A stretch of DNA of 64,000 nucleotides from Podarcis gaigeae (Eukaryota): the NCBI GenBank assembly GCA_964106915.2, contig OZ066918.1. One strand, written 5' to 3'. The notes below the pieces were generated by a model, which worked only from the letters and a program-made list of their open reading frames with translations, was not told where the DNA came from and ran no database searches. How positions within the stretch are numbered: position 1 is the first letter of the stretch; every line of letters begins with the position of its first letter. Below, piece by piece: positions 52,968-54,473 of the stretch. Position numbers and translations under genes: made by a program.

Positions 52968-54473
52968 CTAGAAATAGGGAGAGAGTAATCTGTGAATGAA
53001 GGGCAAAGACGCTATTTGGAGGGGAAAAATAATAACCCTAAAGCAAAGAGCCATCAACCAACTATGCCAGGCTCTGTTTAGCTATACCCAATTATTATAA
53101 TGGTGCTGTCTACCTCTGGACAACGATTATGGAATCCGTCTTTCTCCTAACTAGCGGAATTTGCGCTTTGTCCCATTTAGGTAATTTTTTATTTATTTTA
53201 AAAGCTATCGGTTTTATGTTCTTTTAGCACCAGGTGAATTTATTCTTAGCTTTTACATTCTCGTTCCCCTACAAACCAAAATATGGCAGATACTTCCTCT
53301 CAGTTGGCACCAAGCATTCTGAAAGACTGACTCTGGAGTCTCGCTTCTGGAATATCTCCCTGCCTGCCTTGGAAGAAACCCCACCTTTGCGACCAACTGT
53401 AGCCGAGGATCTACCACTCCTGCTTGTTTCTGTTTAGAACCACACCGTGTGAAAACAAAAACAAACAAAAAAATCAACGTCACACAGACACAAAAAAGAA
53501 GAAAGAGTAACAGGAAGAATAAAAGTGGGAAATGAAGGAAAAGGAAGATGAACAGAAATACCGTCCAAATTAACAAGAATAACTGGTTGTATAACCTGCA
53601 GGTTGTGGATTATCACACATTCATTTATTTTATTTTATTTCGTAAAGGGTGGGGTGGGAGAAGGAATCGTTTGGTTTCTACTTTAATTTATAGAAATTAA
53701 AAGAACTTCAAAATAAAACTTAAATCTTGGTTAGGCGTGGAGTGCACAAACAAAGCAACAACAGGTATCATTGTAAAGAGAAACAATCAGAAAACGGTTA
53801 AGAATTTCACAAAAATTATCAATGCTATTAAATCAGGCCACTAGGCACCCTGGCTTATCCAACTTACATAAAGAACAACATCTATGCATTGCACCTACTG
53901 CCTAATATTCAGAAGACACGTCTAGTGGCAGAATAAAAATATTAGGCATACAATGAATGCGTCCTCTGGAGCAGTTTCCCACAGGGCAAACGGATTCTAA
54001 AAACCGGTCACAGCAAACACGACATTTTGATCTTTTTCATTTTTGCCCAAAGCACTCATGTTGGAGTAATACAAGGCACCTTTCTCAACTGAAGTTCACG
54101 TCTGTTAGCATGAGACTCTCAGCTGAGGCTGAGAGGCAAGTAATCGTATGTGGCCAGTTGACCCTGTGTTGAAACTGACCAATGCCCCCATCAGGTGTCA
54201 GGACTTAAGTGATTGATTCCAAGCTGACACATATGTAGAATTATAAAGGTCAGCTGGCGCAATTTTCCACTGGTGTAATTATAAAAGTCCAGTAAAGTAA
54301 CACTATCACCCAGTCATCTGTAATCTGAGAGTTAACACTTTCAAATCCAAGTGAGTGGACTATGTCCACTTCAGAGGGCATTCCACCCAGCACTAGTCTC
54401 ATGTCACAGTCTCCATTTCGCTTCACTGATGCTCTGTCAGTGCACCTTTAATGATACATTTGCACTTTATTCT

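What the first reader, a model, noticed from the sequence alone, without database searches (positions are those of the whole stretch)
53239..53582. Candidate extra 3' splice site / alternative terminal exon of TCF7L2, 462 nt upstream of exon 17
Seen: on the minus strand a pyrimidine-rich tract with no AG for ~150 nt (53582-53432) ends at TTCTAAACAG|AAACAAGCAGG, so the exon would start at 53429. Joined to exon 12 or 13 (phase 1) it reads E-TSRSGRSSATVGRKGGVSSKAGREIFQKRDSRVSLSECLVPTERKYLPYFGL* (TAG 53269-53271), followed by AATAAA at 53239-53244 and further AATAAA near 53188-53197. After a C-clamp exon it reads RNKQEW*. Established: long AG-exclusion zones mark distant-branch-point regulated acceptors, and the paralogue TCF7 uses several acceptors at its last exon (as recalled, one tail begins ETN...). 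Inference: this is a real alternative C-terminus lacking both C-clamp and CtBP motifs, possibly with a short 3' UTR that escapes the miRNA sites of the main UTR.
Basis: partly seen in the sequence, partly recalled or inferred. Interest (0 to 1): 0.78.

Follow-up and report, generated by a model that had tools for sequence, protein, structure and literature searches.

The report
Conserved extra TCF7L2 splice acceptor

Summary
The sequence features are all there. On the minus strand there is a 151-nt AG-free, 74% pyrimidine tract (53582-53432). The acceptor ...ttctaaacag|AAACAAG puts the exon start at 53429. A 52-codon phase-1 frame runs to TAG 53271-53269, and AATAAA sits at 53244-53239.

Inside this window alone they are not exceptional. 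By a rough matrix the proximal acceptor is weak, and 1006 of 4323 minus-strand AGs score as well or better. The combination of frame and poly(A) hexamer is as common on the non-gene strand.

Comparison with six other sauropsid loci changes the picture:
- The 21 nt around the AG are identical in four squamates and 76-81% identical in three birds; AACAG|A is invariant.
- A 45-nt block at the upstream edge of the tract is 84-96% identical in all.
- The tract between them cannot be aligned between birds and squamates. Yet it is AG-free (137-192 nt) and 73-77% pyrimidine in all six species where it can be measured.

This is the signature of a distant-branch-point, PTB-type regulated acceptor. The peptide tail, the poly(A) hexamer and any donor site are not conserved across clades.

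I put a truly used acceptor at about 0.5.

The parts
53572..53616 (-). Conserved block 1 (...CCACAACCTGCAGGTTATACAACCAGTTATTCTTGTT...). It holds the last upstream AG (53584-53583), so it marks the 5' edge of the AG-free zone, and it is the candidate branch-point region. TGTTAAT at 53575-53569 fits YNYURAY in squamates only.
   Evidence: 84-96% identical to Phrynosoma, a snake, turkey and two other birds, while the 90 nt upstream are only 25-59% identical. It is one of only five BLAST matches between turkey and the 6.4 kb compared (59400-52980); the other four are the surroundings of exon 15, of exon 16 and of the exon 17 acceptor, and one other element.
53432..53582 (-). AG-free, pyrimidine-rich tract: 151 nt, 74% C+T, with 16 UCUU/UUCU/CUUC/CUCUCU-type motifs.
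   Evidence: The orthologous tracts are AG-free over 149 nt (Phrynosoma), 137 (snake), 160 (turkey), 168 and 192 (birds), all 73-77% pyrimidine, although only 39-44% identical between window and birds. AG = 0 against GA = 2-4 in each. P(no AG given composition) is 0.045-0.10 per species.
53428..53448 (-). Conserved block 2, ACGGTGTGGTTCTAAACAG|AA, holding the candidate acceptor AG (53431-53430).
   Evidence: 21/21 identical in four squamates and 76-81% identical in three birds. GGTGTGGTTC and AACAGA are invariant in all seven sequences. In every species this is the first AG after the tract.
53269..53429 (-). Candidate exon body: a phase-1 frame of 52 codons ending at TAG 53271-53269. In phase 2 (after a C-clamp exon) it reads NKQEW-stop (TAG 53413-53411).
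   Evidence: The first 68 nt are 82-85% identical in two lizards, 49% in the snake and about 33% in birds. Phase-1 tails are 52, 66, 48, 3, 23 and 19 aa and are not alike between clades. No protein in two large collections carries this tail (weak negatives).
53239..53244 (-). AATAAA hexamer 25 nt after the stop; two more at 53197-53192 and 53193-53188.
   Evidence: Such hexamers occur about once per 561 nt on this strand. At the aligned position the hexamer is AATAAA in the window and L004, GATAAA in Phrynosoma, AATGAA in the snake, and absent in birds.
58400..58424 (-). True TCF7L2 exon 16 (25 nt, TCTTTGAATTTGGAATATTATGATG), for context. This shows the candidate is not exon 16.
   Evidence: The reverse complement of mouse primer E16r (PMC2847248, Table 1) matches 20/20 at 58400-58419, with none expected by chance. 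The acceptor is aagcag| and the donor |gtaggt. It gives ...CSL-stop after a C-clamp exon.
59221..61791 (-). Upstream exons that could donate to the candidate: exon 12 (61791-61743), exon 13 (61210-61160), exon 14 (60021-59949) and exon 15 (59293-59221).
   Evidence: The translations are ...[55 protein letters not shown] and [25 protein letters not shown]. Exons 12 and 13 end in phase 1; exons 14 and 15 end in phase 2.

Best explanation
The AG at 53431-53430 is a conserved, regulated alternative 3' splice site in the last intron of TCF7L2. It has the 'distant branch point' layout: a branch-point region in or just after conserved block 1, then a polypyrimidine tract of about 110-150 nt rich in UCUU/CUCUCU (PTB-type) motifs, then a short conserved element, then the first AG. 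When used from exon 12 or 13 (or from exon 14 or 15) it shifts translation into unconstrained sequence that soon stops. The resulting TCF7L2 lacks the second half of the C-clamp, the E tail and the CtBP motifs, and carries a short lineage-specific tail. Only acceptor-side signals are conserved: no donor and no poly(A) signal is kept across clades. The simplest product is therefore a last exon extended 462 nt upstream, which runs on into exon 17 and uses the normal poly(A) sites, much as the paralogue TCF7 uses two acceptors on its last exon. Shown: the sequence features and their conservation. Inferred: that the site is used, the branch-point position, control by PTB, and the 3' end of the product.
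For: The acceptor block is identical in four squamates and near-identical in three birds, with AACAG|A invariant. Block 1 at the 5' edge of the AG-free zone is 84-96% identical in all. The tract between them has diverged beyond alignment between birds and squamates (39-44%) and varies in length (137-192 nt). Yet it is AG-free and 73-77% pyrimidine in all six measurable species, with AG = 0 against GA = 2-4 each and P(no AG given composition) = 0.045-0.10 per species. Straight after the AG the sequence turns purine-rich, with 2-6 AGs in 25 nt in every species. Gooding et al. 2006 (PMC1431707) report that large AG-free zones mark distant branch points. They also report that a large zone conserved between species is informative even where BLAST finds no alignment, and that verified cases are alternatively spliced, mostly PTB-regulated and carry regulatory elements between the tract and the AG. 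The region lies in the part of TCF7L2 most subject to alternative splicing (PMC2847248). TCF7 has two acceptors on its last exon (PMC9303524).
Against: There is no RNA evidence of any kind. The 20 nt next to the AG are purine-interrupted and score -0.94 bits. The exon body, reading frame, poly(A) hexamer and candidate donors are not conserved between clades. A survey of annotated TCF7L2 isoforms in chicken, zebra finch, anole and turtle lists no exon between exon XIII (= exon 16) and the last exon (PMC9303524). Block 2 contains TGTGGTT, a RUNX-type site by my own recollection, so the blocks could be transcription-factor sites. Low-complexity tracts can keep their composition through replication slippage without selection.
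Confidence: 0.5

Rival explanations
1. The two conserved blocks are parts of a conserved non-coding cis-regulatory element (an enhancer or silencer of TCF7L2 or a neighbouring gene) that acts as DNA. The pyrimidine tract between them is a long-lived low-complexity spacer, and the AG is only incidentally splice-like.
For: TCF7L2 introns carry other conserved non-coding blocks. For example, 55136-54885 aligns with turkey, Phrynosoma and the snake. Block 2 holds TGTGGTT (a RUNX-type core, own knowledge). Block 1 holds a 12-nt palindrome, AACCTGCAGGTT, which suits a dimeric factor. The exon body is not conserved. No transcript or protein with this junction was found.
Against: An enhancer gives no reason for strand-specific exclusion of AG (but not GA) over 137-192 nt in every species. 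Nor does it explain why the tract's composition is kept while its sequence and length drift, or why the first AG falls exactly at the end of block 2 in all seven sequences.
Confidence: 0.27
2. It is a splicing-regulatory element that gives no stable mRNA of its own: a decoy acceptor or PTB-binding platform. It would engage U2AF/U2 or PTB to modulate removal of the last intron or the choice among exons 13-17.
For: The evidence for conservation is the same as for the main explanation. In addition there is no conserved donor, poly(A) signal or frame and the proximal tract is weak, which suits a site that binds factors but is seldom completed.
Against: Nothing here separates this from a seldom-used productive acceptor. 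No binding or intron-retention data are available.
Confidence: 0.13
3. It is the reader's full model: a free-standing alternative terminal exon (53429 to about 53215) with its own poly(A) site. It would encode a defined new C-terminus and give a short 3' UTR that escapes the miRNA sites of the main UTR. This is a sub-case of the main explanation.
For: AATAAA lies 25 nt after the stop and is kept in one other squamate (L004). Five of the six species checked have some canonical hexamer 167-256 nt after the AG.
Against: The hexamers are at non-homologous places in birds and mutated in Phrynosoma and the snake. By my reading of the sequence, no GU-rich downstream element follows. Hexamers occur about every 561 nt by chance. 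The tails are unrelated between clades and only 3 aa in the snake.
Confidence: 0.15
4. It is a chance pseudo-acceptor with no function.
For: Within the window alone, every feature except the AG-free tract is at chance level, and AG-free tracts of this size occur 2-3 times per strand.
Against: A 19-21-nt block that ends exactly at the AG and is kept from lizards to birds, together with a conserved AG-free zone, is not expected by chance.
Confidence: 0.08

Closest known systems
Distant-branch-point exons with large AG exclusion zones, such as alpha-tropomyosin exon 3 and PTB exon 11 (Gooding et al. 2006, PMC1431707)
   Same: The AG-free zone is 150 nt or more. The pyrimidine tract starts near the 5' edge of the zone and is rich in PTB-type motifs. 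A non-pyrimidine element sits between the tract and the AG. The size of the zone is conserved across species although the tract sequence is not.
   Different: The branch point is not mapped and use of the AG has not been shown. The downstream 'exon' has no conserved body or donor, whereas the known cases are bona fide cassette or mutually exclusive exons.
The two alternative acceptors on the last exon of the paralogue TCF7 (isoforms B/D and C/E; PMC9303524)
   Same: It is the same gene family and the same place in the gene. An upstream acceptor of the last exon changes the frame and the C-terminus and removes or truncates the C-clamp.
   Different: The TCF7 acceptors are annotated, transcript-supported and give defined tails. 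Here the site is 462 nt upstream, unannotated, and the tails differ between lineages.
TCF7L2 exon 16 (exon XIII; S/F isoforms) and the 'exon 16-prime' reported in human brain tumours (cited in PMC2847248)
   Same: All lie between the C-clamp exons and the last exon and bring in an early stop, giving short isoforms without CtBP motifs.
   Different: Exon 16 is a separate 25-nt cassette at 58424-58400 that is identical to mouse over 20/20 nt. The candidate lies 5 kb further downstream. The position of exon 16-prime could not be checked because the paper is not held.

Membership tests
Distant-branch-point (large AG-exclusion-zone) regulated 3' splice site | AG-free zone of 100 nt or more immediately upstream of the acceptor AG | tested here: met
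   151 nt, 53582-53432.
Distant-branch-point (large AG-exclusion-zone) regulated 3' splice site | Large AG-free zone kept in orthologues | tested here: met
   137-192 nt in Phrynosoma, a snake, turkey and two other birds. AG = 0 against GA = 2-4 in each.
Distant-branch-point (large AG-exclusion-zone) regulated 3' splice site | Branch point near the 5' end of the zone with an adjacent pyrimidine tract | tested here: inconclusive
   TGTTAAT (53575-53569) fits YNYURAY in squamates but reads TGTTATT in birds. TTCAT/TTTAT/TTAAT a little downstream is kept in 5 of the 6 sequences that cover it. Mapping it needs lariat data.
Distant-branch-point (large AG-exclusion-zone) regulated 3' splice site | The AG is actually used (junction reads or cDNA) | not tested
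No listed holder of the stretch is on record as RNA.
Alternative terminal exon with its own poly(A) site | A poly(A) hexamer kept at a homologous position, with a downstream U/GU-rich element | tested here: not met
   The hexamer is canonical at the aligned place in 2 of 4 squamates and 0 of 3 birds. By my reading, no GU-rich element follows in the window.
Conserved protein-coding exon | Reading frame and peptide conserved across species | tested here: not met
   Phase-1 tails are 52, 66, 48, 3, 23 and 19 aa, alike only among the three lizards over about the first 24 residues. No homologue was found.
Internal cassette exon | A donor site conserved downstream of the acceptor | tested here: not met
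   Birds share CAG|GTGAY at +70 to +72. Lizards have weak sites at +15 and +45. The snake has none within 330 nt. No position is shared between clades (rough matrix of my own).
TCF7L2 exon 16 | Orthology to the mammalian 25-nt exon 16 | tested here: not met
   Exon 16 lies at 58424-58400.
Known structured RNA (Rfam) | A match at or above the family's gathering score | tested here: not met
   Only two chance-level miRNA-model matches, at 19-20 bits against gathering scores of 95-96.

The most novel reading that the evidence does not exclude
A splice acceptor kept since the lizard-bird ancestor, of the distant-branch-point, PTB-repressible kind, defines an unannotated upstream start of the TCF7L2 last exon. 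It would be a third, tissue-switched route to C-clamp-less and CtBP-less TCF7L2, besides skipping exons 14/15 and including exon 16. The selected output would be truncation itself rather than any particular tail. The layout parallels the two last-exon acceptors of TCF7.
Probability: 0.4. Interest if true: 0.55.

Novelty: new member of a known kind. Interest (0 to 1): 0.45.

Why it matters
The C-terminal isoforms of TCF7L2 decide whether it activates or merely occupies Wnt target promoters, and their tissue-specific choice is studied in diabetes, cancer and brain development. A further conserved acceptor in the last intron would add a regulated way to make short isoforms in sauropsids. It would also give a clean comparative example in which only the acceptor signals, and not the exon, are under selection. 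If it turns out to be an enhancer instead, it is one more conserved non-coding element in a locus already known to be full of them, and of modest interest.

Tried and rejected
After, no letters of 52887-52979 were sent to any search tool. Every later query started at 52980 or ended at 52885.

2. Tail peptide searches. Against 1.84 billion cluster representatives there were only three low-complexity repeat proteins, which are unrelated. Against the 5.8-billion collection, limited to proteins of 29-91 aa, there was nothing. Both are weak negatives, because isoforms collapse into one cluster and the length window excludes full-length proteins.

3. Joined exon models. That step was left out.

4. 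Transposon origin (an antisense SINE/LINE tail acting as the pyrimidine tract). Only low-complexity matches occur elsewhere in the window, and the exon body has none. No evidence for this.

5. Identity with exon 16. Rejected.

6. A 15-nt microexon (donor GTG|GTAGAT) or a 45-nt cassette (AAG|GTGGGG). Both keep the frame in lizards, but the donors are weak or absent in the snake and birds. Not adopted.

7. Pairing of block 1 (CCACAACC) with block 2 (GGTGTGG). I saw this by eye. The snake block 1 breaks it, and I did not pursue it.

8. Deeper conservation. The teleost Albula locus has neither block in 10 kb upstream of the last exon. The amphibian-like (L007) and non-human mammal (L009) contigs are too short to reach the site.

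9. Material left alone. The DNA of one hit (P0046) was withheld by the tool. The ENA metagenome hits P0010 and P0011 were not pursued because they could be human contamination.

10. Howng et al. 2004 (exon 16-prime) is not held.

11. Rfam: nothing.

Full report
**Setting**

The window carries the 3' part of TCF7L2 on the minus strand, from a squamate.
- Its E-tail piece is 93% identical to Phrynosoma platyrhinos and 92% to a Micrurus protein.
- From the sequence the exons are: exon 12 at 61791-61743, exon 13 at 61210-61160, exon 14 at 60021-59949 (CRARF), exon 15 at 59293-59221 (CRALF), and the last exon starting at 52967.
The reverse complement of the mouse exon-16 primer E16r (PMC2847248, Table 1) matches 20/20 at 58400-58419, with none expected by chance. 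The 25-nt exon 58424-58400 has the expected acceptor and donor and gives ...CSL-stop after a C-clamp exon.
- The candidate is therefore a further element between exons 16 and 17, not exon 16 itself.

**The observation**

All stated letters and coordinates are right.
- AG-free stretch: 53582-53432, 151 nt, 74% pyrimidine.
- Acceptor: ...ttctaaacag|AAACAAG, with the exon starting at 53429.
- Reading frames: a 52-codon phase-1 frame to TAG 53271-53269; NKQEW-stop in phase 2.
- Poly(A) hexamers: AATAAA at 53244-53239 and two more at 53197-53188.

**Chance level within the window**

Judged from this window alone the case is weak.
- AG-free runs of 140 nt or more occur twice on the minus strand (leaving out one that spans the N run) and three times on the plus strand.
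- I scored acceptors with a rough position matrix typed from approximate vertebrate frequencies, so the values are indicative only. The candidate scores -0.94 bits and the real last-exon acceptor 6.76. 1006 of 4323 minus-strand AGs do as well or better than the candidate.
- 115 minus-strand AGs and 86 plus-strand AGs combine such a score with a phase-1 frame of 50 codons or more. Of these, 17 and 26 also have a poly(A) hexamer within 150 nt of the stop.
- Poly(A) hexamers occur about once per 561 nt on this strand.
- The exon body has no other copy in the window, so there is no sign of a transposon origin. Rfam finds nothing.

**Expression evidence: none obtained**

- The look-up of sequencing runs listed no holder on record as RNA. 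It did list raw RNA runs of a related species (organism A).
- My single read-laying run covered 52700-54500, so that the normal last-exon acceptor would serve as a positive control.
- The tail peptide found nothing related among 1.84 billion cluster representatives; the three hits are low-complexity repeat proteins. It also found nothing among proteins of 29-91 aa in the 5.8-billion collection.
- Both are weak negatives. Isoforms collapse into one cluster, and full-length proteins fall outside the length window.

**Comparative evidence: how the loci were obtained**

- I searched with the E-tail piece next to the barred places (window:52532-52885:-) and looked up the cluster members of the hits.
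- I then fetched the DNA around the last exon: Phrynosoma platyrhinos (L001), turkey (L002), an elapid-like snake contig (L003), another squamate (L004) and two further birds (L005, L006).
- The last intron aligns with Phrynosoma at about 73% over much of its length. With turkey, only five BLAST blocks align in the 6.4 kb compared (59400-52980). These are the surroundings of exon 15, of exon 16 and of the exon 17 acceptor, one element at 55136-54885, and 53611-53538.

**Comparative evidence: what the alignments show** (A2 and A3; figures)

| Segment (window coordinates) | Identity to window, squamates | Identity to window, birds |
|---|---|---|
| 90 nt upstream of block 1 (53709-53620) | 55-59% | 25-36% |
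| Block 1 (53616-53572) | 84-96% | 84% |
| Tract (53571-53449) | 67-73% (two of three; the L004 contig is cut short) | 39-44% |
| Block 2 (53448-53428, ACGGTGTGGTTCTAAACAG\|AA) | 21/21 in all three | 76-81% |
| Body, first 68 nt (53427-53360) | 82-85% in two lizards, 49% in the snake | about 33% |

- Block 1 holds the last upstream AG.
- In block 2, GGTGTGGTTC and AACAGA are invariant in all seven sequences.
- The tract is unalignable between birds and squamates and varies in length. In all six species where it can be measured it is nevertheless AG-free (149, 137, 160, 168 and 192 nt beside the window's 151) and 73-77% pyrimidine.
- Each tract has AG = 0 while GA occurs 2-4 times. P(no AG given composition) is 0.045-0.10 per species.
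- The tracts carry 13-18 UCUU/UUCU/CUUC/CUCUCU motifs each.
- In every species the first AG after the tract is the one in block 2. The next 25 nt are purine-rich and hold 2-6 AGs.
- The teleost Albula has neither block in 10 kb upstream of its last exon.

**What is not conserved**

- Phase-1 tails are 52 aa (window), 66 (Phrynosoma), 48 (L004), 3 (snake), 23 (turkey) and 19 (L005). The bird tails are unrelated to the squamate ones.
- At the aligned position of the window's AATAAA, L004 has AATAAA, Phrynosoma GATAAA, the snake AATGAA and birds nothing. Birds have hexamers elsewhere or none.
- Candidate donors do not share a position across clades: birds have CAG|GTGAY at +70 to +72, lizards have weak sites at +15 and +45, and the snake has none.

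**Interpretation**

- The conserved anatomy is a conserved element, then a composition-constrained AG-free pyrimidine tract, then a short conserved element, then the first AG, then purine-rich sequence. This matches what Gooding et al. 2006 describe for distant-branch-point exons (PMC1431707).
- They report that conservation of a large AG-free zone is informative even where BLAST finds no alignment, and that verified cases are alternatively spliced and mostly PTB-regulated. Such cases also carry regulatory elements between the tract and the AG.
- An enhancer reading explains the two blocks. Block 2 holds TGTGGTT, a RUNX-type core by my own recollection, and block 1 holds the palindrome AACCTGCAGGTT. 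It does not explain the strand-specific exclusion of AG but not GA, nor why the zone ends exactly at block 2 in seven sequences.
- I therefore favour a real splicing element, with about 0.5 for a used acceptor and about 0.13 for a decoy or regulatory site.
- Only acceptor-side signals are conserved, so the most economical product is a last exon extended 462 nt upstream. It would run into exon 17 and use the normal poly(A) sites. A stop inside a last exon would not trigger nonsense-mediated decay. The output would be a truncated TCF7L2 lacking the rest of the C-clamp and the CtBP motifs, with a lineage-specific short tail.
- This parallels the two acceptors on the last exon of TCF7 (PMC9303524).

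**Against the splicing reading**

- There is no RNA evidence.
- The proximal tract is weak.
- A published survey of annotated TCF7L2 isoforms in chicken, zebra finch, anole and turtle reports no exon between exon XIII and the last exon (PMC9303524).

**Novelty and score**

If used, this is a new member of a known kind (a distant-branch-point alternative acceptor; alternative last-exon acceptors in the TCF family), not a new mechanism. I score interest at 0.45. The cross-clade conservation is real and gives a directly testable prediction in chicken and lizard RNA, but the functional gain over the known short isoforms is uncertain and use of the site is unproven.

Noticed in passing
It is identical to mouse over the 20 nt of primer E16r and gives CSL-stop after a C-clamp exon and VFEFGIL-stop after exon 12 or 13.
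   Followed up: yes
window 54885-55136 (-): A conserved non-coding block lies in the last intron. It is 72.6% identical over 259 nt with turkey and also aligns with Phrynosoma (within 56075-54882) and the snake contig (55200-54904). Its function is unknown; it could be an enhancer or another splicing element.
   Followed up: no
window 52700-53700 (runs X1-X14): Fourteen very small runs (72-149 million letters, organisms A and B, four studies) hold 55-62% of the words of this 1-kb stretch. That is far too much for shotgun DNA at that depth. My guess is target-capture libraries whose probe sits on the ultraconserved start of the last exon. An RNA origin, which would fit an extended last exon, cannot be excluded.
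   Followed up: no
window 60037-60189: An N run of 153 bases lies directly upstream of exon 14, whose acceptor AG is at 60023-60022. The branch-point and tract region of that exon therefore cannot be read. I left it as it is.
   Followed up: no
L001 (Phrynosoma, GCA_020142125.1) and L002 (turkey, GCA_000146605.4): Both public annotations split TCF7L2. The last exon is called as a separate short gene: 'hypothetical protein JD844_006837' (172 aa) in Phrynosoma and a 168-aa 'transcription factor 7-like 2' in turkey. In the turkey record, a gene with the beta-catenin-binding and HMG domains lies downstream of the C-terminal piece on the same strand, which suggests a mis-ordered assembly.
   Followed up: no
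window 59294-59305 (-) compared with 53430-53440 (-): The acceptor of exon 15 (...gtgctaacag|A) resembles the candidate acceptor (...ttctaaacag|A in the window; ...tcctaacag|A in one bird). Both have a branch-point-like CTAAC/CTAAAC right against the AG.
   Followed up: no
window 53360-53427 (-): The first 68 nt after the candidate AG are more conserved among three lizards (82-85%) than the flanking intron (55-73%). The indels between the window and L004 in the frame are 6 and 3 nt, so in frame. The snake and the birds do not share this conservation. It may be a lizard-specific constraint, either exonic enhancers or coding.
   Followed up: partly
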